Shown in pieces: positions 54 to 11,906 of a stretch of DNA of 36,169 bases (within the stretch, counting starts at the first letter, position 1; the number at the start of each line of letters is the position of its first letter). The stretch comes from Hyphochytrium catenoides (taxonomy: Eukaryota > Protista > Hyphochytriomycota). The notes beneath the pieces are model-generated. The model saw only the letters and a program-made list of their open reading frames with translations. It did not search any database and had not been told where the DNA came from. Both the position numbers and the translations under genes were made by a program. The stretch covers positions 1 through 36,169 of the forward strand of contig FLMG01003956.1 of the NCBI GenBank assembly GCA_900088475.1, in the 5' to 3' direction.

Positions 54-597
54 TTATGGAGATGAGAGCTCTTCATATAACGCGTCCTTGCTAGGACACT
101 GACAGACTTCCTTATGCACATCCAAGTCCATGACGTCTTTATTGATTAGCATATGCTTTGACTTGGCGGCCGCCGCGCCTCGAAAGAGGCGGTTAGGCGA
201 TACACTGAAGGTTGCAGAACTCTTGGATGAGGGCTTCTTTCGCTCTCTTTCCTAAAAAACAACGCCATGGCCCTGTAGTGGATTCGCAAGGGCCATGAGG
301 CTGCCTCTCCACCCTCTCTCCGCGCCTTCCTTATCTTCTAGATCTCTCCATCTGCGTCCTCTGACTAATAAATATGAAGGTGTGGCCTGGATCTCGTTAG
401 ACCAACTGCAAGAGCTTCGGATCGTCCTCATGGACCGCATAGACTCCGTCCGTTGAGTAATCATCCAACCTATCAAACTCAATAGTAGACGCATCTGCGG
501 AGAAAAGCACACAGGGCGTCAGATCAAGTGGTTCAGAGGGAGAGAGAGACGAAACAGAGAAGAGGAAGAGAGAGAGAGAGACAGAGAGAGAGCGAAG

Positions 598-628
<31 letters not shown>

Positions 629-3600
629 TATATGTTACGGTCTCATTCAAGGTACCTGTCGGCGTCATTGAGGAGAGCTGCCCTCCATCTGGTCCCAAAC
701 ACTGCTTGAAGGACTTGGCAGCCACCATTACCTTTCCTTGCACCTTCCCTTTCAGCTGACTGCCCTTCGTCAGTTTTGAAGAGAAATTTTGCGCCTTGCC
801 AGGCTCCCGAGACGCCTTTCTGAGGGCAATGACACCTTCACCAAGGCTCTTGTTCTCAGCGTCTAGGAACTAGAGCAATAGTAAGGCAGTGAGGCAGAGA
901 AAACAATAAGCCAGCTAACGGGAGGCGTTCTGACCTGAAGAAGGACATGCACGCCATGATGTATCTGCGTCTGTCCCTTAAAAGTGAGGCTCCCTGACGA
1001 GTCACCGAGGTGAGAGTGGAGGGTTAAAAAAAAGAAGAAAGCAGCTCAAGGTACGTCACAAAACAAGAGAGAGAGACAGAGACTCAGAGTGTGAGAGAGA
1101 GACAGAGCGAGAGAGAAGCGAAAAGGCAAAGAAATAAGAGCATAGAATAGTCCGAAGAGGAAAAGATACATGTCGCGCTCACCTGTACTTTGCACCTGAC
1201 TCCAGCTTGTCTGTGTGATATTAGGAAACAGCACAGAGTCCTGTCTAGCGCTCGGGATGGAGAGAATACCTGCCACTTCGTGGATCTTACGTTGTCCCAT
1301 GTAGGGATCTTCAGGAGGAAGGGGAAACAGCGTGACGACGGACGAGATCTTGGAGAGATCCTGGTCTACCAAGGTCGCCATTATGTTGCTCAGCTCCACC
1401 TACCGGACGGAGTCGAGAGGCAGAGATCATCAGTACCGGGCTGACATTGTATTTACTCTAGCCTTTTTTTTCTCCATGCTCCACATTCTAGGTTTACAAC
1501 TATAAAGTTCTTGTTATCTCTCTCTTTTTACTCCCTCTTTTTCTCTGTCTCCTTCTCTCTCCCTATGTATGTCCCTCAATGTGTGTGTGTCTCTCTCTCC
1601 TTCTTGTGCAGCACAGCCTGAAGTATGTGGCATGATCTCCTCACAATATTTGTTACGCTGCTAGTTGCCTCCAACAATGGTTCTATGTCTCAGTCTCCTC
1701 TGTCAAGTTTCAACCCCAACAGTGATAATCGCTTTCTCTTCTGCCCTTCGCTGCGGCGCACTGAGACTTTGCATCTCTTGGCATCTCTCATTCCTTTGAC
1801 TCACCTCAAAAATGAGTAGCGAGTTCGCGGTTGGGTCACCTCTCGGAGGCAGCGTTCGGAAAAGCGTATCCACTTGAACCTTGACCTCAGAGCAAACCGG
1901 CCGATGATCGCTCATGACCAGACTCTCACAAATAGTGTATGACTTGGCGGAGAGACGACCCTGGGAAGAGANNNNNNNNNNNNNNNNNNNNNNNNNNNNN
2001 NNNNNNNNNNNNNCTTTACCTTATAGTCAGGCAAGGAGTGGAAGAGTATCCTATCTGTGTACGAAGGAGTACGTGCGCCCTGATGTAGGTTAAGGTTAGT
2101 ACGGAGGACTCATGAGTCTACTGAGCCACATTGAAGGCCTTGAAAGACTATCAGAGTCTGTTCTTGGAGGAGGCAAGTAGCTATCTATCCATGGTTCTCT
2201 CTTTCTCTTGTACTCTCTCGCTCTCTCTCCTCCTGTCTTCAGATCTACCTTGTCATTGCTGCCTCTGATGGAGTAGAGCTCAGCTATCCGTTCTGAAGTG
2301 AAGAGCTCATCTGTTGCCGCAGCTCCCTTCTGCCGCCGGTAAGAAGGAGGGAAAGCGATGGGCGGCTCGAAAAAGTTGCAGAAGATCTGCAGAAGGAGAC
2401 AGACCATAAGACTTGGAAGGGCCATCATAGAGGGAGGGGAGGAGAAGAGCACTGATAAGAGAGAGCCCACAGAGTCAATTAGTGGAAGAAATGGCGTAGC
2501 AATGAGAAGACTGGTTGAGGTGCGCACCTTAGATCGTTGCATAACCTGATACAGCTCATCGAGCTCACGTAACTCCTTCCAGCACGTATCAGCGGCACTG
2601 AAGGAAAGGAATGGCGGCGATGTGTAAGACAAGTCATGAAGGCATAAAATCTAACTCAAAAAAGATTGTGTCTTCTTACCTTTGGAGCTTTAACGCCCGG
2701 GCTGAACCCGTCTGAGATTCTCCCGCCTTGAGCTTGCTGACTAGCGGAGCTCGAGCTCTTTGAGCCTCTTCTTTAGCTTTTATCGCCTCTCTCTCTTGCC
2801 GCAGTTTCGACTCTAGTCGCATCACAACCTGGAGAAAGAGTCAGGCTTAGGACAGCGATCATGCAGATACCGCGGTCTTTTGCCACGAGTGCTTCTCCCT
2901 TTTCTTTTTTCTCTCTCTTTCTGTACTCTCGCCTCTCACTCTCTTTTCTCTCCCTGGGCTGAGCTTTTCCTTCCTGTCTGCTCAGCATCTGCAGTGCCGG
3001 TTCTCGTACCGAGACTTTATCCAGGACATTCTCCGGCGTCTCTAACAAGCGGTAGTTAAGATCACCCAGAAAGATTGTATGCTGGTGCACCAAAGGAAAG
3101 TCAAAGCCGTAGTCCTGCTCCTCCAACACCATGTCCTTGATAATCTGCCGTAGAATAAGAGAGTCACGTTCTGTCAGCACTCGTCACATCTATTGCGTGC
3201 TCTGCGCTCGTTTCTTCATATTGTCTCTCACTGATCCTTCTCTCTAACCATGCCAGTACTGGACTCTCTCTCCTCCGTACTCATCCTGCATCATACAGCG
3301 ATGGACTTACGCTGTAGACGTCCTCATTGCGCTGCTCAGCCATATTCTTGCCCTTGTAACCCAAAACGGTTAGGACAGGATCAGACTTCAGTGTAGCGAA
3401 GGGGCCTCCACCCCCAAGGAAAACGAGTAAATAACGAGGGAGAAACGTGGCAATATGGAAGAGTGAAAGAGAAAGAGACAGACAAACAGAGAGAGATGGA
3501 GAGAGAGAGAGAGAAACAGAGTAAGTGTAGGAGTTTCACCTTTTGGTCGGAAGACAGATGAGCAGTAAGGAACGCGAAGGTGGAGTCGTAAAAGCGGAAT

Positions 3601-6600
3601 GCCATGCCCACTGCACCCTTGTTGGGAGCTCTTCTGAGAAGGAGGTTTATTCCGCGGTTAACGCGCGCCTCTTTCAGATCAAACTGCCCCGCAGAGAAGA
3701 CTCCAGTGTCAACATACTGCTTCTTTGCGTAGACCGTTAGCCCGATATAGCCCTGAGGATATAGATCGGACATTAAATCACTATGCAGAGATTGCTAATG
3801 CTTAAAGAGAGTCAGAGAGAGAGGAGAGTACCCCGCACAAAGGTAAAGAGGATGACAAGGTGGCAGCTTATGAATAGGTTGCCTGGTCTTTCAGACTCAC
3901 ATGAAACCCGAGCTGCGTCGCGTTGCTGCCGATTTGGTCGCTGAACTCTACGTAGCACTCCGGGCCTCCAAGATGCTGGTGCATGACAGCCCTAACATTT
4001 GCGTCATGGTGAGGAGGCGACAATGAGGCCCTGTACAATCGATTGGCCGTCCATTGCTCTCTCTTATTCATGCTTCTCCGGTTCCTATTCTGTTTCCTAT
4101 CTACAAGGATGGCGTACCTGAGCTCGTTGAAACACAAGCATTCTTGTACGCCAATGATATAGACATCGTGATCCAATGGCAGCCATTCGTCTACATTTGG
4201 CGGGACACCTGTCAGGAGAGGCCGAGGAAGCACCATGGTGAGACAATATATCGAAAGGATTACTTGGCATTTGTGGCAAAGTGCGAAGACAAGATAGGTC
4301 AGAGACCGCACGGTGGAGGTGGGAGACGAACGGAGAAGCCCAGGATAATTCCCCAACATCCAGCACCTGTCTCTCCCATGTTAAAGGACGTGACATAGAA
4401 ACTCTTCTCCTCTAGCTTTTTGTTCTCTTCCTCGAAGAACTCAGGCTGCACGTCGAACATCTGCAGAGTACGTGTGAGATCAACAAATTGGAGGAAACGT
4501 AGCATCAACATCGTCATCTTTACAAAATGCAAACAGCATCAAATCAAAGAGAACCCGCGAAATTAGCGAGAGCAATAGGAATGGAGCCCTAACCTCGCTT
4601 CGCGTGTGCTTTAATGTTGGGGTCTTGAGCCATCTGGACCGCCACCAGTACTGAATAATTTTATCCGCATTGGAGTAGACGATAGCATTCAAAAAGCCTG
4701 CGAATTGATCACAATGTGGGCACGAGGGGACAGTTATTAGTTATTTGGAGAATGGCAGGCAGGACGACTGAGTGTATTTAGCGATGAGCTATTCCATTGG
4801 GGCAAGGAGAGACACAGACAGACGACAGACAGAGACAAGAGAGAGAGAGAAAGGGAGAGAGAGAGACAGAGAGAGACAGAGAGAGAGAGAGAGGAAGAGA
4901 AGACTCTTCTTTGATATGGATGAGTTGCCTTTGAAATAGTATAGATCGTCACGCATTGGAAAGAGAAGAGTCAAGAAACGCTACCCTGCAAGGGCTGGGA
5001 TACAGCGTGTACGACAGAGGCTGGGAAGTACGGCCGTCCTCTTATGCTCCAGATTATTCGATCCAGAAGCGCAAAAACCCAGATGCCTAAGAATGCAAGA
5101 AGATACTGCTGCAACTTCCGCACTACCGCGCGCTCAGAGGCGAACAAAGTCAATGCTATGGCAAGACAGGGAGACGGTGAGTGAAAGAGGTAGCAGAGGC
5201 GTGAAGCGGCAAGGGAACAAGTCATTGAAGGTTAGGCTGGAGTCAGGACAAAAGGGACAGGTCCTCTCCTTACCAGATGCCTCAGTCCTCTCACACCGGT
5301 GCCGAATCTCCTTCTTGACCCTCTCGGAGACCACGAGTACAAAGAAGAAAGCGATAAAGACAACGGAGTAGAAGTGATGGAGCTGCCAGGAAGGCTCAGA
5401 TATCCAGCACCAGAGTACAGAGTCTCCGTAAACAGCGGCTGAGCAGGAGGCGAGACGTTAGGGTCGTGGTGACGGGAATTTTAAGTGACCAAGATGCAGA
5501 AGGCAAAGTGCTCTCATTATTCTGGACGTGAGTGAGGACAAAGGCTGAGAAACGACAGCGGAGTTTAAAGGACCAAAGAGAGGGAGAAAAGAAGAAGCAA
5601 ACAAAAGGGAGAACAGCACAGATGAGGGACATGAGAGGAAACAGATTGATCTCTTCTGATAAAAGAAAGCGAGGAACCAAACTCAGCGATAGGCTAGGGA
5701 ATTGCAGCAGTGCACCAGAAAGAAGCTCTGCGGAAGGTCCTACCGATCGCAGGTGTGATAGTCATGATGGTACATATAGAGAAGGTGATGCCAGCATAAT
5801 AAGGCAGATAACGGCGGGTGCTCTCCTCTGTCTCCCTCCAACAGACCCAGAGATACATGTTGGTTGCGATGCAGGCTGTCCAGACTAACGAGCCGAGCGC
5901 TAGCCACTGTGTGGCTGCCGCTTGTAAGGTGCACACCCATGAGAGAGGCGTGTCAATTGATTCCGGGCCCGCCCTGCCCACGAGGTAGACAATGCTCAGA
6001 GCCAAGTCCTGATAAGAGCAAGAACAGAAGGCAGCCAACCGATAAACATCCGGCGAAGGCGAGAAGAGGTGAGGGCAAGCGTGTGCAAGTGTTAGGACGT
6101 GACAGCAACAGACAAGGACCGGGACGAATGAGTGAGTGAGGTCAAAGAGCTAATACAGCGGTGAAGCTTTTATGAAGGTCCGTTCAGAGGTAGGATTTAA
6201 GCCACAAGGAAAGAAGGAGACATAGCAGAGTAGGTGTCGAGGGGAGAGAGGAAGGGAGACAGAGAGAGAGAGATGAGGAGAGAGAAAGAAACAGAGAAAA
6301 GAGACAGAGAAGTGAATGAGAGAGAAACAGAAAGACGAGCGGGAAAGAAAAAGTGAGAAGTTGTTGAAAGGAATCAGTAAGCGAGAGTGAGAAGAGAGTA
6401 GTGATGACGAAACAAGAGAGAGACAGGACAACTCCTTCTTACAATGCTACATAGAACATAGACCAATAGATTGCTGAAGATGATACGTCGCTTCTGATAG
6501 CAGTTCCGGGCAAAGGAGTAGAGCACAACGGAGGCACCTGCATGAGGCCCCATAGGTCAGCGCATTAGACCCTGCAGGGGAAGGAAGAGCTCTGAAGGTG

Positions 6601-6699
6601 TTGGACGGCCTTACCCAGCATAGACAGCACGGACGAGACCGTGATGCCTACCACCAGCGCATAATTCTGACTCTCAGAGAGATCCTCGATGGCCATCAT
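54..6699 (-). CDS. GPCR-inositol polyphosphate 5-phosphatase fusion (cAR/GCR1/Git3-like 7TM + INPP5 catalytic domain + C2-like domain), multi-exon
   Basis: Spliced by hand with GT-AG junctions, in frame from ATG 6699. The 7TM part reads MMAIEDLSESQNYALVVGITVSSVLSMLG-ASVVLYSF...CSI-DLALSIVYLVG...CTLQAAATQW...WTACIATNMYLWV...YGDSVLWCWI...RKLQQYLLAFLGIWVF...PLQGFLNAIVY. It is followed by the 5-phosphatase motifs TSFNMGE, IGVQE, NKGAV, TAHL, GDLNYR, FPPSY, PSYTDRIL and SDHRPV, and then a C2-like segment. The 3' end is uncertain: stop at 397-399 if unspliced, or at 54-56 if the in-phase 66-codon exon 251-54 (preceded by TTTTTAG) is used. Confidence 0.9.
1972..2013. other. Assembly gap (N run) inside an intron
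   Basis: The Ns lie between the exon ending ...LPDYK and the exon starting GRLSAK; both splice sites are intact. Confidence 0.95.
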
Positions 6700-7059
6700 T
6701 CACGCCCAAGAGTCCCCAAGGTCCTGATGAAGCCTAATCCAGGGCCTCTAGCCTACTGCACAGCAGAGCATAGCACAATCTCTTTGCGCGTGGATGATGA
6801 ATCATAGCGCCAACGCTGTCAAAGCTAGAGAGACCACCTCATCAATAGGAGCTATTAAGGCAGCGAAGCGGCATAGGGACAGAGACGGACAAGCATATGC
6901 TATGCACTGTGTGTCTTTATCAACTTCTGGCCGTTCTCTTTCAGTCTCTTTTCTAAATCGAGATGCGACGGATTGTGGCCCTGCTCTTATCTCCGCTCTA
7001 AGTCCTTCGGAGCTCCGCCATGACGTTTGGCCCTGGCGCCAGGCCTGAGAGCCCTGTCT

Positions 7060-7353
7060 TTCCTCCTCTTTCTCCGTCTCTCTCTCTCCCTCTCTCTCTC
7101 TCTCTTTCTCCGTCTTCTCTCTCTTTGCCTTTCTTCTGCCCTCGGTGGGCCTGCTGCTGCCTCCGCCTATCTGACGGGGCCAAGAAAGAGAGCTGAAGTT
7201 TAGATAAGCGTTCATCGGAGAGACAAATAGGAGTTTGCAGAGGGCGGAGGAAGTTGACGGGAACAGTAGACATAGCAGAAGAGAGAGCGAGACAGAGAAA
7301 GAGAGAGAGACAGAGAGTGACACAGAGAGGGAGAGAGAGAGACAGAGAGAGAA

Positions 7354-7418
<65 letters not shown>

Positions 7419-7425
7419 GAGAAAG
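7060..7425. repeat. (CT)n tract followed by a long (GA)n microsatellite
   Basis: Directly visible: CT-rich 7060-7140, GA-rich 7275-7425. Confidence 0.9.
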
Positions 7426-8327
7426 TGTGATGAGTGGGAGGTCTACTTGATAGAAGCTGGAGAGGGAAGGAGGAAGGGTTATTCTTAGCCATGACACCTG
7501 GATCAGCCATTGAAACCCAGATATGGCGTGGGTATTATAATAAATGACAGAAGAGGCAATTAGTAGTTAACTAGGTTCAGAAAAATGAGGTAGTGTCGGT
7601 TACGGAGAGACGGTGTGGACAGGTGGAGGACAGCCTTTCAGTGAGAGAGGAGCCCAACAAGCTCAAGAACCTCTTCTATCACTGTTGCCACCAGCTCTTG
7701 GACATAGACACAAAGAGCGAAGGTGCAAGAGATAGAAGAAGATGCCAGGAACTATCTCGGGGAGCTGAAGAGCGCAGTGAGTCAAGTCTTGTTGCAGTAT
7801 TGTGGGAGAAGGGAAGGAGTTTCCAAAAGGTGAAGGAATAAGGTCTCTGGCCGCGTAAGCTCTCGGGGAATGGTTGACAGTTTGTGAATGAGGCAGAAGG
7901 TTCTTGCAAGAGCTACCCTTTTTAACGGTTCTCTGTACTGCAGCCTTTTCCTTCTAGCAAGTAGCTTAGCTTCGACCACGGGTTTCCACGTCCATTTCAG
8001 GACGATAGGCCCAACCACTTATACTCTCGAGAGTCTCTTCTCTTATGGCCTTTGTTCTTTCCACAAGGTGTTTCTCTCTATGATCTATCCGGTACGCTAC
8101 TTTGTGGTAGCTATCGGCATGAGGCTGAGGTAGAGGGCGCTGCAAACACTTGCAAATATTATCGAGGGTGGAAAGAAAGTCTGATTTACCAGAGGAGCGT
8201 TGAAAAAGATAAACCTTTCAGGGTATAACAGTACTTGCAGGCATGTCCGTCCTTAGGTTTAGGTCCAGGAGCCAGTTATAATGGACGCAGGCTCTTGGCA
8301 CATATACATATATATATACTTGCTCCG

Positions 8328-8899
8328 TCAGATGTGACGCCACCATTCGGGATACCACTCTGCGTAGTTATTATCTGTGCTGCGAGCACTACTAGAAGGC
8401 TGGAGAGTCTGTGAATCCAGCGGTCCTTCCGGAATGGGTTTCTTTTTCCATCGCCGCTGCCTGGAATGACCCTTAGAACATCTCTAGTCGGGTGGGGTGG
8501 GTTCTGGCGAGGATAGCTGCTTACCTGCTTCAGATTGTAATCATACAAAGCTGATTGAAATGGGGTATAGACAGAGCCCTGAGATCACCAGCAGAGAGTC
8601 GTAGAAAAGGGACTTTAGTCCATGTTTAAATCAACCCGTAAGTTATGAACCCTTACCATCTTCCTCTCTGCCTCTCGGAGCTTTTCACTAAGAACAATGG
8701 ACTGAGAGGTCATCGTTGTCAAGGTGGCATTCAGCTATGACATCAAGGATTGTGAGACATAGCCAATAAAAACTAGAGTGTGAGCCGCACACACATCGCA
8801 ATCAGTAAGTCATGTTGAAAGGAAGAGGGTGCTTACCTCCTGCACCTGCTGCAGGAACTGTCCTAAGGCCTCGAGATTCCTAAGCTCATAGTCGTCCAT
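8328..8899 (-). CDS. DAD3: DASH/Dam1 kinetochore complex subunit Dad3-like protein (~88 aa, 4 exons)
   Basis: Exons 8899-8837, 8734-8657, 8578-8525 and 8399-8328 are all phase 0 with GTAAG donors. Product: MDDYELRNLEALGQFLQQVQE-LNATLTTMTSQSIVLSEKLREAERKM-GSVYTPFQSALYDYNLKQ-PSSSARSTDNNYAEWYPEWWRHI. LREAERKMGSVYTPFQSALY fits the Dad3 pattern LRxLERKxGLVxTLxKASVY as I recall it, and the size fits. The last exon is less certain. Confidence 0.75.
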
Positions 8900-9415
8900 G
8901 GTTGCGCGTCTCCTCTTTTTCTACTATGTGTTCTTGACCTTGTCTAAGCGGTCTACCCAACCACAACCAGCTGTTTGAGCGTAGATGCAAGACTCCAGCT
9001 CAGTTATCGTTCACCGGGACAGGCGACTCTCATCCGACACCCGCTATTTCTGTTTGAAAGGAGCTGTTAATCAGCCAATAGGCTTTGGAAGCACCGCGGA
9101 GCTTGGGGTCAACTGTATTGTTACACAGAAAGGCCTCTCCAAAGATGTCGACGCTGAATGCGTGATGACAGCAGGGTCTCACCACTACGTGTCCTATCCT
9201 CCCAGAGATGAGTCTTCGAGTTTCTTCGTTTAAAAAACAGCGCGGCAGTAGAACATGGTCCCGTTATTCCTTGCGGTTCCTACAGAGATCAGTGACAGAG
9301 CAGCAGCTGTTTTATTTGAAGAAAAGTTCATCACAGATCCAAACTACCAAGGAAGGCGGGAAGGCCGTCTCCATCTGTTATATCTATAATTATTCTTCGG
9401 CAGAAAGAAAACAGT

Positions 9416-9497
9416 GTCATCATGGGAGAGTGGTCTAATCCGCCAGTTTCAGGTACTGGTCTCTTCGGGGGCGTGGGTTCGAATCCCACTGATGACA
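9416..9497 (+). tRNA. tRNA-Leu (anticodon CAG), copy 1
   Basis: Acceptor stem GTCATCA/TGATGAC with discriminator A; D loop AGTGGTCTAA; anticodon arm CCAGT-TTCAGGT-ACTGG; long variable arm; T arm GTGGG-TTCGAAT-CCCAC; TTTTT Pol III terminator just downstream. Confidence 0.97.
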
Positions 9498-9796
9498 AAA
9501 TCTTTTTGCCCTCTTGACTCTTGTCTGCTTGAACTTTAGATTTCCTAAAAGTAGCTACCCCATTATTACCCAGTCTGGCTAATACTCGTACCAAGGGAAA
9601 CACCCTTATTTCGTCGCAATAAAGTTGCAACAAAGCACCAGTTAACAGTTCCAAGGCCTACCAAATGTGGTGATTTGAAGCCCTCTACCACTGCTGCTCT
9701 AATCTGGTTGGACTGTCACAGCAGAGACGTCCAGAAATTGCCCATTGCTATTCAGCGTATAATTGCTTGCTTGATTCTTCTCTTTGTATGACTGGT

Positions 9797-9878
9797 GTCA
9801 TCATGGGAGAGTGGTCTAATCCGCCAGTTTCAGGTACTGGTCTCTTCGGGGGCGTGGGTTCGAATCCCACTGATGACA
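9797..9878 (+). tRNA. tRNA-Leu (anticodon CAG), copy 2, identical to copy 1
   Basis: The same 82-nt sequence, followed by AAACCTTTTT. Confidence 0.97.
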
Positions 9879-10019
9879 AAACCTTTTTGCTTTCCCCAAT
9901 ATCGACTCAATCTATTCGTTAACGGCTAGGGATTCTGATTTCTCTTGGTGGTGGCTGCTTGCCTGCCAACGCGAAGAAGAGCAGCAAAAACGGCCAGCAC
10001 CTGATCTGCTGTTAGCGTC

Positions 10020-10056
10020 ATTCTTCTCTCTCTTTTTCTCTCTCTGTCTCTCTCTG

Positions 10057-10115
<59 letters not shown>

Positions 10116-10210
10116 CCTCTCTCTTTCTTTCCCTTTCTCTCTCTCTCTCTATCTATCTCGCTCTCGCCCTCTCGCTCGCTCTCTGTCTCTCTGTCTCTCT
10201 CTCCCCGTCT
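10020..10210. repeat. (CT)n microsatellite upstream of the WD40 gene
   Basis: Directly visible. Confidence 0.9.
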
Positions 10211-10460
10211 CGCGCTTGCTATCTCCTTTAATTTTGGGGTGAATCAGACCAAGCAGCCCCGGGCTATCTGTGCCCTTCGCCTGCCCTAAGAAGAGTTAGT
10301 AGGAGAGACAGAGGAGACAGGAGAAAGAGATCTGAGAGGCAAAGCGGCGTCTGCAGCAACTTGGAGCTGACATAGAAGTTAGGGTCCATACTTTCTGAGA
10401 CACTTAAGAGACTGTACGGGCAGACAGAGAGGGCGAGCATCTTTCTAACCTGAAGACCTG

Positions 10461-11906
10461 ATGCGGATCGTCGCGGGCACCTATGAGGGCTACCTCTTCG
10501 GCTGGGAAAGTACCCGCACAGTATCCCAGCCAGGTGAAGACCCAGCGCTAAGCCTCACATTCGCCTTTGAAGCCCATGACGAGTGCATCAGAGCTATTGC
10601 CATGGTCAAGGAAACAGGAGGCAACTTCCTCGTGACAGGCGGCAACGACGAGACCATCAGGTGCAACCTCAGACTGGGTGGTCTTTTTTCCGTCGTTCTC
10701 CTCAAGCGAAGTGGCATAGAGCTTCACTTGCCACTTTTTCGAGCTGGACAGCGCCCACAGGCATCTCTTCTTTCCCCAAAGACTCTGCTGCTCTATTGCG
10801 CTCGAAGTCATACCTAACCAGCTTTCTGCTTTCTCTCTCTCTCTCTTTGCATATACTAAGGATATACAACCTGCAGAAGCGGGTAGAAGTGGGCTCTCTG
10901 ATGCAGCACGCCGCCGCGATCATGGCGCTTGACTTTTACCAAGATTTGAATCTTTTGAGTGGAAGTAAGGATGGCACCATCTGCATCTGGAGGACTAGCG
11001 ACTGGCAGTGCCTGCACATCCTAGGAGGACACAAGTGAGCTCTTGCCTCCTGTCTCTGTCTCTCCCATGCCTTTCTCTCTCCCCTCCTTCTCCTGTCTGT
11101 CTGTCCCTTAGTCCTTTTCTGGCTCTGCATCTTTGTGTCCCACTTTTTCTCATTTGTTCTCTCCTTCTCTCCACTTTGAACCTTGAACTTGGTCTCGCTC
11201 TCTGCCTCTTTCTCTCTTTGTATAGTTTCCCTCAGACAGATGGTCAGTGCCTATTTCCTCCTTGCTCTCTCTGCCTCCAGACCTGGGACTCGACCAGGTT
11301 TCAGACTGATTTCTTGGTTTACCTGGCTTGTGTTCATTCTCTTTTCTTCACTTCCTGACCCCTGGGTTTCTCCACTCTTTATGGCTCTCACTCGTCTCTA
11401 AACTTCTTCTGCGGACAGAGACGCTGTGAACAGCATTGCGGTGCATCCCTCAGGCAAGCTGGCCCTTTCTGTCTCCAAAGACCGAACGTTGCGGATGTGG
11501 AACCTGGTGAAGGGGCGCTCGGCCTTTATTAAGAGATTGGAGAAAGAGGCCACTCTTGTCCGCTGGTCGCCCAAGGGAGAGAGGTAGACCCCATCTCTCT
11601 GGCGCTATATCTTTGTGAGAATATCTCTCTCCTCCCATTGCTCTCTGTGCCTCGCCTGATTCTCTCTCCTTTTCATCATTCCACTGGGTTGATTCTTCTC
11701 TGCTGAGTCTTACATAGCTCTTCTGTATGTCCCCACAGCTATGCGACGGTGATTGATAAGACTGTCTACCAATACAACGCGGCTGGCGATGTAAGTCTCC
11801 CTCTGCCTTCTTCTGTCTTGCTTCTTTGCATCCATCTAGCATTGCTAAACAGGAGGTGCTTGCCCTTCTCTCTCTCTCTCTCACATTCTCTCTCTCTCTC
11901 TTTCTT

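What the first reader, a model, noticed from the sequence alone, without database searches (positions are those of the whole stretch)
655..1399. SHIP-like C2 domain behind the phosphatase of the receptor fusion
Seen: the exons after SDHRPV encode LLIFE-VELSNIMATL...FPLPPEDP...GSLTFKGQTQIHHGVHVLLQ-FLDAENKSLGEGVIALRKASREPGKAQNFSSKLTKGSQLKGKVQGKVMV. Known from memory: the C2 domain that follows and allosterically supports the phosphatase in metazoan SHIP1/2 ends with a similar pattern (H-hydrophobic strand, GEGCIAL, LT..G...G..QG.I). Inference: the enzyme half is a SHIP-type phosphatase-C2 unit, making the protein a three-part GPCR-Ptase-C2 in which a 7TM replaces the SH2 recruitment module. Routine annotation would probably miss this.
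Basis: partly seen in the sequence, partly recalled or inferred. Interest (0 to 1): 0.75.

Follow-up and report, generated by a model that had tools for sequence, protein, structure and literature searches.

The report
SHIP-type C2 domain in receptor-phosphatase fusion
The stretch behind the lipid 5-phosphatase of this receptor-enzyme fusion gene very probably folds into a C2 domain. Its closest known relative is the C2 domain of animal SHIP1/2, so the phosphatase-plus-C2 unit is older and more widespread than annotation shows.

Summary
**Observation: confirmed.** On the minus strand, GT-AG exons at 1960-1805, 1399-1183, 993-935 and 869-656 encode exactly the peptides quoted.

**Family membership.** The exons tile a domain profile built only from other organisms' proteins, in order (positions 1-34, 74-123, 139-155, 159-205 of 209). 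Exons b and d rank 1st and 2nd of 1,136 open six-frame segments of the window.

**Interpretation: supported, by several individually modest lines.**
- Exon d's only Pfam hit is the SHIP1/2 C2 model (E 0.016, below cut-off).
- The family profile's only hits in all PDB sequences are SHIP chains (E 0.032; C2-only 0.21).
- An AlphaFold model of a contiguous Aphanomyces relative (pLDDT 69) has eight strands.
- In an exhaustive comparison with 48,161 solved chains, SHIP2 C2 (residues 746-875) is rank 1: Z 9.3, against at most 8.2 for other C2 domains.
- A two-chain prediction reproduces the SHIP2 phosphatase-C2 interface (0.75 against controls 0.00).
- The window keeps all five C2-side interface residues of SHIP2.

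**Limits.**
- The window's own spliced protein was never joined or folded.
- There is no transcript evidence.
- No relative reaches Pfam's threshold.

**Prior knowledge.** GPCR-INPP fusions are published; their C2 is not mentioned in the papers I could search. This scan noted the same domain earlier in a degenerate paralog of this genome.

The parts
1805..1960 (-). Exon a. It carries the last catalytic strand with SDHRPV (1895-1912), a linker of about 24 residues, and the first half of C2 strand 1 (SLLIFE, 1805-1822).
   Evidence: Acceptor cag|GGT at 1960 and donor GAG|gtgagt at 1805. Matches family HMM positions 1-34 at 13.8 bits. tblastn of relatives covers 1963-1811.
1183..1399 (-). Exon b. 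It carries the second half of strand 1, strand 2, the family's most conserved motif FPLPPED...QRKIHEV (1274-1327; a loop plus helix in the model) and the conserved Trp.
   Evidence: Acceptor tag|GTG and donor ACAG|gtgagc. Family HMM positions 74-123, 33 bits, rank 1 of 1,136 segments. Profile A2 found it in the genome at E 1.3e-17. BLASTP against the paralog gives 9e-9.
935..993 (-). Exon c. It encodes the strand ...HHGVHVLLQ, whose H and L align with SHIP2 interface residues H820 and L822.
   Evidence: Acceptor cag|GG and donor CAG|gtcaga; phase 1 in, phase 0 out. Family HMM positions 139-155, only 1.3 bits. The position is fixed mainly by collinearity and reading frame.
714..869 (-). Exon d, C2 part. 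It encodes the last three strands, including SLGEGVIAL (822-842), where E, V and A align with SHIP2 E836, V838 and A840, and LTKGSQLKGKVQGKVMV.
   Evidence: The only Pfam hit is PF24147 C2_SHIP1-2_2nd: E 0.016, 15.8 bits, profile positions 68-105 of 106. Family HMM positions 159-205, 17.5 bits, rank 2 of 1,136. Language-model neighbours are C2 clusters.
656..713 (-). Exon d, start of the C-terminal tail after the C2 domain.
   Evidence: It lies beyond the end of the family HMM and of all relatives. Donor ACAG|gtacct at 656.
397..494 (-). Putative last exon e. It encodes an acidic tail ending ...EDDPKLLQLV, followed by a TAA stop (397-399).
   Evidence: Supported only by the splice signal cgcag|AT and the frame. 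No homology and no RNA support.
2020..4260 (-). Exons of the inositol polyphosphate 5-phosphatase catalytic domain. Examples are 3752-3540 (NKGAVG...AHLSS), about 3171-3007 (GDLNYR) and 2109-2020 (PSYTDRILFHSLPDYK). All catalytic motifs are intact.
   Evidence: Exon-level PF22669 hits. Collinear tblastn matches of oomycete relatives. Motifs read.
4983..6699 (-). Exons of the N-terminal seven-helix receptor (cAMP-receptor-like).
   Evidence: PF05462 Dicty_CAR at 21.8 bits (cut-off 21) and 17 bits on two exons. tblastn of the Phytophthora GPCR-INPP P0019 covers 5972-4983.
1972..2013 (.). Run of N (42 bases) inside the intron between the PSYTDRIL exon and exon a.
   Evidence: The donor AAG|gtaaag at 2020 and the acceptor at 1960 flank it, so no coding sequence seems lost.

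Best explanation
**What it is.** The roughly 190 residues encoded after SDHRPV (exons a to d, window 1822-714, minus strand) form a divergent, Ca-site-unassessed C2 beta-sandwich. It is homologous to the C2 domain that follows the 5-phosphatase in animal SHIP1/2. It belongs to a small, poorly annotated family found behind the phosphatase of stramenopile (oomycete and hyphochytrid) GPCR-INPP proteins.

**How it likely works (inferred).**
- The C2 packs against the face of the phosphatase opposite the active site, through the same hydrophobic interface as in SHIP2.
- This makes a rigid Ptase-C2 unit that stabilises the enzyme and orients it on the inner membrane leaflet.
- The seven-helix receptor, rather than an SH2 domain, supplies the membrane tether and the input.

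**Shown here:**
- the gene structure, by sequence signals;
- family membership of the exons;
- the C2 fold, and SHIP as nearest neighbour, for a relative;
- a SHIP2-like predicted interface for another relative.

**Inferred only:**
- that the window's own protein folds and packs the same way;
- lipid binding;
- any allosteric effect on catalysis;
- the substrate.
For: 1. **Context.** The domain starts about 24 residues after SDHRPV of an intact 5-phosphatase, as in SHIP.
2. **Pfam.** Exon d's sole hit among 24,736 models is the SHIP1/2 C2 model, matching its C-terminal third.
3. **Family.** Contiguous relatives were recovered, including P0022 from Aphanomyces astaci, P0014, P0015, P0018, P0032 and P0002-5. 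They align with exons b and d. An HMM built without the window's rows places exons a to d collinearly.
4. **Profile against all PDB sequences.** The only five hits are SHIP1/2 Ptase-C2 chains (E 0.032-0.13). With the SDH motif removed, the only two hits are still the SHIP C2 end (E 0.21 and 0.57).
5. **Fold.**
   - The AlphaFold2 model of P0022:380-564 has pLDDT 69.3, with the core at 75-89, and eight strands.
   - The top 13 Foldseek hits are SHIP1/2 (E 1.4e-3).
   - VIA-align gives Z 9.4 and 9.3, rmsd 2.5-2.7 A over about 110 residues, on SHIP1 727-855 and SHIP2 746-875.
   - In the exhaustive search of 48,161 chains, SHIP2 is rank 1. Every other top-50 hit is a C2 or C2-like domain with Z of 8.2 or less.
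6. **Language-model features.** Exon d and the paralog's domain both fall among C2-clan clusters.
7. **Catalytic domain.** The catalytic domain of a relative is closest to SHIP2 (7e-12) and SHIP1 (3e-10) among solved 5-phosphatases.
8. **Interface prediction.**
   - Predicting the P0018 phosphatase with its C2 as two chains gives score 0.75, best control 0.00, partner pLDDT 56-57 and at least 76% contact agreement. That mark was reached by 51 of 78 solved complexes and 2 of 108 mismatched pairs.
   - The confident contacts are the equivalents of SHIP2 F593, L597, R649 and Y697/P698 on the phosphatase side, and of H820, E836, V838 and A840 on the C2 side (residue list from PMC5550278).
   - The window has H, L, E, V, A at the five C2 positions and F, L, P on the phosphatase side (reading).
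Against: - **Sequence statistics.** No single sequence statistic is significant.
  - The Pfam hit is 15.8 bits against a cut-off of 27.5.
  - I scanned about 35 sequences and saw unrelated hits of similar E-value: Arteri_env 0.021 and Fungus-induced 0.03.
  - None of the relatives or the paralog hits the SHIP C2 model on its own.
  - An earlier profile (A3) found nothing in the PDB.
- **Structural margin.** SHIP leads generic C2 domains by only about 1 Z unit, which the tool calls close to a tie.
- **Quality of the models.**
  - They are of relatives at 25-30% identity to the window's exons.
  - The AlphaFold alignment had only 12 rows.
  - Both predictors may reproduce the solved SHIP2 Ptase-C2 structure from memory.
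  - The first fold attempt failed (pLDDT 33).
- **Window-specific gaps.**
  - The window's own joined protein was never searched or folded.
  - Exon c is statistically unsupported on its own.
  - There is no transcript evidence.
- **Interface and motif.**
  - The SHIP2 polar contact R649-E862 is not conserved here (N and L).
  - The family's strongest motif, FP.P.ED...RK.HEV, has no evident counterpart in the SHIP alignment.
Confidence: 0.75

Rival explanations
1. It is a C2 domain, but not specifically of the SHIP lineage. A generic C2 was fused behind the phosphatase independently in stramenopiles, and the resemblance to SHIP at the last three strands and the interface is convergent or due to chance.
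For: - The structural lead of SHIP is only about 1 Z unit over E-Syt, Itch, ferlin and Notch-ligand C2 domains.
- The sequence E-values are weak.
- The oomycete relatives lack the GEG.IAL signature.
- The same genome also has a 5-phosphatase followed by a canonical PF00168 C2. This shows that such fusions arise more than once.
Against: - The only sequence hits in Pfam and in the PDB are SHIP, in both search directions.
- Sequence identity in the structural alignments is highest for SHIP: 14-17% against 5-11% for most others.
- The catalytic domain next to it is itself closest to SHIP1/2.
- The predicted interface uses the same residues as SHIP2.
Confidence: 0.15
2. It is another beta-sandwich known to follow 5-phosphatases: a SKICH domain (as in INPP5J/K) or an ASH/Ig-like domain (as in OCRL and INPP5B).
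For: These are the other accessory folds that follow 5-phosphatase domains (established knowledge). All are beta-rich, so a reading of the sequence alone cannot separate them.
Against: - No Pfam hit to SKICH or OCRL-type families at E up to 10.
- None appears among the top 50 structural matches in either search, where every hit is C2 or C2-like.
Confidence: 0.03
3. This is not a real folded domain in this gene. The exon model would be wrong, or this copy would be decaying, and the region would be linker or untranslated sequence.
For:
- Exon c is only 19 codons and statistically unsupported.
- The paralog on contig C3462 has lost catalytic residues.
Against: - Four exons keep frame with canonical splice sites.
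- They map in order onto a profile made from other species.
- The catalytic motifs of this copy are intact.
- The interface residues are conserved.
Confidence: 0.05

Closest known systems
SHIP1/SHIP2 (INPP5D/INPPL1) phosphatase-C2 unit; Pfam PF24147 C2_SHIP1-2_2nd; PDB 5OKM, 6IBD
   Same: - A C2 sandwich sits directly behind a 5-phosphatase whose catalytic domain is itself SHIP-like.
- It is the best structural match: Z 9.3-9.4 over the whole C2.
- The window shares the strand signatures H-h-L-L, S.GEG.IAL and LT..G...G..QG.
- The hydrophobic interface residues are conserved: equivalents of H820, L822, E836, V838 and A840 on the C2 side, and of F593, L597 and P698 on the phosphatase side.
   Different: - It stays below Pfam's threshold.
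- The recruiting module is a seven-helix receptor, not SH2; I found no PH-R, proline-rich or SAM parts.
- It carries a family-specific, nearly invariant FP.P.ED...RK.HEV loop-helix.
- The polar R649-E862 contact is absent.
- The organism is a stramenopile, where the substrate may not be PI(3,4,5)P3.
GPCR-INPP 'GPCR-bigrams' of oomycetes and Nannochloropsis (van den Hoogen et al. 2018, PMC5784254; PMC6033456)
   Same: - Same architecture: an N-terminal 7TM receptor plus an inositol polyphosphate phosphatase.
- The window's catalytic and C2 exons align with oomycete members from Aphanomyces, Pythium and Phytophthora.
   Different: - The published description has two parts only. 'C2 domain' does not occur in that paper.
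- The organism here is a hyphochytrid, outside the taxa listed there.
- This gene has many introns.
Voltage-sensing phosphatase (Ci-VSP): voltage sensor, PTEN-like phosphatase and C2 (PMC4389355)
   Same: The working principle is the same. A transmembrane sensor is fused in one polypeptide to a phosphoinositide phosphatase that is backed by a C2 domain.
   Different: The parts are unrelated: a four-helix voltage sensor and a Cys-based PTEN-type phosphatase, with a PTEN-type C2. This is an analogy only.
Canonical Ca-dependent C2 (PF00168), for example behind another 5-phosphatase of the same genome (contig C1143)
   Same: It has the same fold superfamily, and language-model neighbours of the domain are PF00168 clusters.
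   Different: There is no PF00168 hit for the window or for any family member. The C1143 copy does hit it, at 28.4 bits, and carries the DxxGxSDPY signature.

Membership tests
SHIP-type C2 (PF24147, C2 of SHIP1/2) | Lies directly C-terminal of an inositol 5-phosphatase catalytic domain | tested here: met
   SDHRPV is at 1895-1912 and the domain begins about 24 residues later in the same exon. Exons are collinear with relatives.
SHIP-type C2 (PF24147, C2 of SHIP1/2) | Scores above Pfam's gathering threshold for PF24147 | tested here: not met
   Exon d scores 15.8 bits against a cut-off of 27.5 (E 0.016). Other exons, the paralog and about ten relatives get no hit. The joined spliced protein was not tested, by rule.
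SHIP-type C2 (PF24147, C2 of SHIP1/2) | Eight-strand C2 beta-sandwich fold | tested here: met
   Met for a contiguous relative, not for the window's own protein. The AF2 model of P0022:380-564 has pLDDT 69.3 and eight strands. All top-50 PDB matches are C2 or C2-like.
SHIP-type C2 (PF24147, C2 of SHIP1/2) | Closer to SHIP C2 than to other C2 families | tested here: inconclusive
   SHIP2 ranks first of 48,161 chains, Z 9.3 against at most 8.2, a margin of about 1. The only PDB sequence hits are SHIP, at E 0.032 and 0.21. All evidence points the same way, but each margin is small and no phylogeny was made.
SHIP-type C2 (PF24147, C2 of SHIP1/2) | Hydrophobic Ptase-C2 interface (SHIP2 F593, L597, Y697, P698 with Y770, H820, L822, E836, V838, A840) | tested here: met
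   - By alignment, the window has H, L, E, V, A at positions 820, 822, 836, 838 and 840, and F, L, L, P at 593, 597, 697 and 698.
- The two-chain prediction for relative P0018 scores 0.75 against 0.00 for controls, with contacts at these positions.
- Y770 could not be placed.
- This is a prediction, possibly from memory of 5OKM.
SHIP-type C2 (PF24147, C2 of SHIP1/2) | Binds phosphatidylserine and raises catalytic turnover | not testable with these tools
   This needs purified Ptase and Ptase-C2 constructs, as in PMC5550278.
GPCR-INPP (GPCR-bigram) | N-terminal seven-helix receptor domain | tested here: met
   Dicty_CAR at 21.8 bits (cut-off 21) on 6149-5697 and 17 bits on 5231-4974. tblastn of Phytophthora P0019 also covers it.
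GPCR-INPP (GPCR-bigram) | C-terminal inositol polyphosphate 5-phosphatase domain on the same polypeptide | tested here: inconclusive
   The catalytic exons are present with intact motifs, on the same strand and collinear with full GPCR-INPPs. That they form one transcript is inferred, with no RNA data.
SKICH / ASH accessory domains of other 5-phosphatases | Pfam or structural match to SKICH or OCRL-type ASH | tested here: not met
   No Pfam hit at E up to 10, and none among the top structural matches.
Canonical C2 (PF00168) | Pfam PF00168 match with the Ca-binding Asp signature | tested here: not met
   No PF00168 hit for any exon or relative. It shares the fold superfamily only.

The most novel reading that the evidence does not exclude
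The phosphatase-C2 unit is an ancient eukaryotic module, predating the split of animals and stramenopiles. In these organisms it is driven directly by a seven-helix receptor, much as a voltage sensor drives the phosphatase-C2 of VSP. The nearly invariant FP.P.ED...RK.HEV loop-helix is unique to this family and lies outside the predicted phosphatase interface. It would then be the element that couples receptor state, or membrane lipid, to enzyme activity, giving G-protein-independent receptor signalling.
Probability: 0.2. Interest if true: 0.75.

Novelty: new member of a known kind. Interest (0 to 1): 0.45.

Why it matters
- **A third part for a published architecture.** GPCR-INPP proteins are described as two-part fusions of unknown mechanism. 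A SHIP-like C2 clamped to the phosphatase gives them a third part and a concrete structural template (SHIP2 5OKM).
- **Direct experiments follow.** One can compare Ptase with Ptase-C2 constructs, and make interface mutants at the equivalents of SHIP2 F593 and L597.
- **The SHIP unit is not an animal invention.** The SHIP Ptase-C2 unit may have been paired with different recruiting modules in different lineages.
- **Annotation.** It marks a C2 family that Pfam currently misses in oomycetes, which include crop and fish pathogens, and in their relatives.
- **Limit.** It does not change what is known about how C2 domains or 5-phosphatases work.

Tried and rejected
- **Exon-by-exon phmmer against the PDB**: only chance hits.
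- **PF24147 search of the genome**: nothing. The control genomes also gave nothing, so this is uninformative.
- **The one big protein search, with the paralog's 153-residue open frame**: one true hit (P0002) and one spurious LRR protein (P0001).
- **Profile word search with A2**: no new members.
- **Metagenome contig scan with A2**: 331 pattern matches, none confirmed.
- **Pfam on all recovered relatives and on the paralog**: no C2 model hit. The SHIP signal at Pfam level is therefore unique to the window's exon d.
- **Profiles A3 and A2 against the PDB**: no SHIP hit. Only the better alignments A5 and A6 found SHIP.
- **First AlphaFold job, on P0003 with 7 rows and long disordered inserts**: pLDDT 33, unusable.
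- **hhalign of the 20-residue exon c against A5**: uninformative.
- **Other copies of the domain in this genome**: only the window and contig C3462 carry it.
- **SKICH and ASH readings:** rejected on the fold searches.
- **A cGMP-phosphodiesterase GAF hit to the linker of P0003** (E 0.016): judged to be chance.
- All window evidence is exon by exon, by reference.
Full report
**1. What is in the sequence**

The finding lies in a multi-exon gene on the minus strand. Reading that strand gives five exons after the N-run, all with GT-AG borders.

| Exon | Coordinates | Content |
|---|---|---|
| a | 1960-1805 | End of the catalytic domain with SDHRPV, a linker, then SLLIFE |
| b | 1399-1183 | VELSNIMATL ... 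FPLPPEDP ... SWSQVQST |
| c | 993-935 | SLTFKGQTQIHHGVHVLLQ |
| d | 869-656 | FLDAENKSLGEGVIAL ... GKVQGKVMV, then a tail |
| e (putative) | 494-397 | Acidic tail and stop |

The phases close (0, 1, 0, 1). The 42-base N-run (1972-2013) sits in an intron. The stated range 655-1399 only misses the first half of the first strand, which is in exon a.

Upstream, the exons carry an intact 5-phosphatase: FNMGE, GVQE, NKGAVG...AHLSS, GDLNYR, PSYTDRIL and SDHRPV. Further upstream is a cAMP-receptor-like seven-helix domain, with Dicty_CAR at 21.8 bits against a cut-off of 21. Oomycete relatives align exon by exon in the same order along the strand (tblastn).

Everything on the window was done exon by exon, by reference.

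**2. A family behind the phosphatase**

Exon b has a weak match elsewhere in the genome, on contig C3462. It lies 700 bases downstream of another 5-phosphatase. That locus is a second receptor-phosphatase gene in which nearly the whole post-catalytic region is one open frame of 164 residues. BLASTP of exon b against it gives 9e-9.

The domain is therefore rare or very divergent in public data.

Word searches from P0002, and from the catalytic part of a relative, then recovered more members:
- P0003 to P0006;
- contiguous phosphatase-plus-tail proteins P0014, P0015, P0018 and P0032;
- P0022, from Aphanomyces astaci.

Pythium and Phytophthora proteins were among the catalytic hits. These are oomycete GPCR-INPP proteins; P0019 carries Dicty_CAR plus the phosphatase.

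Alignment A5 shows one domain shared by all of them and by window exons b and d. An FP.P.ED...RK.HEV motif is nearly invariant, and the ending follows the pattern LG.G.h.h ... L(T/S).GG..G.l.h.

An HMM built without the window's rows places the exons as follows:

| Exon | HMM positions (of 209) | Score |
|---|---|---|
| a | 1-34 | 13.8 bits |
| b | 74-123 | 33 bits |
| c | 139-155 | 1.3 bits |
| d | 159-205 | 17.5 bits |

Exons b and d rank first and second among all 1,136 open six-frame segments of the window. Only the window and C3462 carry the domain in this genome.

**3. Is it a C2, and is it SHIP-like?**

*Sequence.*
- Exon d's only Pfam hit is PF24147, the SHIP1/2 C2 model, over its last third. 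The hit has E 0.016 and 15.8 bits against a cut-off of 27.5.
- This is not significant by itself. I scanned some 35 sequences and saw unrelated hits of similar E-value. No relative hits the model.
- In the reverse direction, profile A5 searched against all 177,635 distinct PDB sequences returns five hits, all SHIP1/2 Ptase-C2 chains, at E 0.032-0.13.
- After removing the SDH motif (profile A6), the only two hits are still the end of the SHIP C2, at E 0.21 and 0.57.
- That the sole hits in both directions are the one family that shares the domain context is hard to ascribe to chance, although each E-value is weak.

*Language-model features.* Exon d and the paralog's domain both fall among C2-clan clusters. 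For the paralog, 23 of 30 hits are PF00168, with RPGR1_C, DUF1005 and Aida_C2 also present.

*Structure.*
- A first AlphaFold job failed, with pLDDT 33.
- With the richer alignment A5, the compact Aphanomyces domain (P0022:380-564) gave pLDDT 69.3, core blocks at 75-89, and eight strands.
- The 13 best Foldseek hits are SHIP2 and SHIP1 Ptase-C2 entries, at E 1.4e-3 to 4e-3.
- VIA-align gives Z 9.4 on SHIP1 727-855 and Z 9.3 on SHIP2 746-875. The rmsd is 2.5-2.7 A over about 110 residues, at 15-17% identity.
- In an exhaustive comparison with 48,161 representative chains, SHIP2 is rank 1. All other top-50 matches are C2 or C2-like domains with Z of 8.2 or less.
- ESM Atlas shape neighbours are also mostly C2 proteins.
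- No SKICH or ASH domain appears anywhere.

The C2 fold is well supported. The SHIP-specific affinity is consistent but rests on small margins.

**4. How it probably works**

In SHIP2 the C2 packs on the face of the phosphatase opposite the active site. The hydrophobic core is formed by A592, F593, L597, Y697 and P698 on the phosphatase side and Y770, H820, L822, E836, V838 and A840 on the C2 side. There is also a polar R649-E862 contact. The C2 stabilises the enzyme, helps bind phosphatidylserine and raises turnover (PMC5550278).

Numbering the PDB alignments reproduces those residue numbers. The window then compares as follows (reading):

| SHIP2 residue | Window residue | Location in the window |
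|---|---|---|
| H820, L822 | H, L | exon c, VHVLL |
| E836, V838, A840 | E, V, A | exon d, GEGVIAL |
| F593, L597 | F, L | YGFDFPL |
| Y697, P698 | L, P | HSLPD |
| R649 | N | not conserved |
| E862 | L | not conserved |

The oomycete relatives are less SHIP-like at these C2 positions (Q, T, C). This explains why only the window's exon touches the Pfam model.

I also ran a two-chain prediction with the complete phosphatase of relative P0018 (30-385) and its C2 (400-565).
- The score was 0.75 and the best of three controls 0.00.
- Partner pLDDT was 56-57, and the runs agreed in at least 76% of contacts.
- The mark was reached by 51 of 78 solved complexes and 2 of 108 mismatched pairs.
- The confident contacts are F179 and L183 (equivalent to F593 and L597), L267-G270 (646-649), L322/P323 (697/698), H95 (820), Q113, V115 and S117 (836, 838, 840), and the loop equivalent to E862.
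- Because SHIP2 Ptase-C2 is solved, this pass may come from memory. It shows likeness, not binding.

I therefore infer a rigid SHIP2-type Ptase-C2 unit hanging from the receptor's C-terminus at the inner leaflet. Lipid binding, allostery and substrate are untested. The family-specific FP.P.ED helix lies outside the confident interface and remains unexplained.

**5. Comparison with what is known, and novelty**

GPCR-INPP fusions were described in oomycetes and Nannochloropsis as two-part proteins. The paper does not mention a C2 (PMC5784254; PMC6033456). A later review of oomycete inositol signalling does not either (PMC9694693).

An earlier follow-up in this scan (s1-347929) named the organism as Hyphochytrium catenoides. 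It described a degenerate copy with a 'SHIP-like 5-phosphatase plus C2'. This fits the C3462 paralog, whose lost catalytic residues I could read. The scan has thus seen this domain before, on other DNA.

The window's copy differs in having an intact active site and the most SHIP-like C2 of the family.

I file it as a new, divergent member of the SHIP-type C2 kind inside a published architecture. Pfam membership fails formally. Fold, context and interface criteria are met, partly through relatives only.

The same genome also has a 5-phosphatase followed by a canonical PF00168 C2.

**6. Verdict**

| Item | Result |
|---|---|
| Observation | confirmed |
| Interpretation | supported |
| Confidence in the C2 fold | about 0.9 |
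| Confidence in specific kinship with SHIP C2 | about 0.75 |

The finding refines annotation, gives a structural template and suggests clear experiments. It is of moderate interest.

Noticed in passing
L005 (G000:C3462:108000-117999), about 4400-8587, plus strand: A second GPCR-INPP gene of this genome carries the same post-catalytic domain in one open frame (L005:8096-8587) and stops right after it. Its phosphatase has lost key residues: QE is QQ, the CHL His is absent, and NYR is NFI. It is probably the copy an earlier follow-up called degenerate.
   Followed up: partly
L011 (G000:C1143), minus strand 2400-2654: Another 5-phosphatase of the same genome is followed directly by a canonical Ca-type C2 (PF00168, 28.4 bits; DVNGKSDPYVKF). 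The genome therefore holds two different phosphatase-C2 designs.
   Followed up: partly
window 1274-1327, minus strand; alignment A5: FP.P.ED...(R)K.HEV is the most conserved element of the whole family, with F, D and K nearly invariant across hyphochytrid and oomycete members. It models as a loop plus helix and is not in the confident predicted phosphatase interface. Its role is unexplained.
   Followed up: partly
window 397-713, minus strand: About 55 residues follow the C2 that relatives and the paralog lack. The tail is acidic and ends with EDDPKLL, which fits the acidic dileucine sorting pattern [DE]xxxL[LI]. The last exon rests on splice signals only.
   Followed up: no
P0006 (metaclust, 405 aa): This database protein joins receptor helices and the start of the phosphatase directly to the middle of the C2-like domain, skipping most of the enzyme. 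It may be a mis-assembly or an alternative transcript.
   Followed up: no
window 530-650, 1050-1110, 1500-1600 and other introns: Introns of this gene are full of GA/CT dinucleotide runs. Translated, these give long fake open frames (LSLSLS...), which inflate ORF lists.
   Followed up: no
L014 and L015 (Logan contigs of SRR15309551 and SRR15309535), 7987-10894: In these oomycete-like assemblies the orthologous gene is nearly intron-free. It was called as four adjacent pieces: two without Pfam hits that are probably the receptor, then the phosphatase, then the C2 part. The neighbours are a polycystin/RyR-type channel and an M28/TFR-like gene, conserved in both contigs.
   Followed up: no
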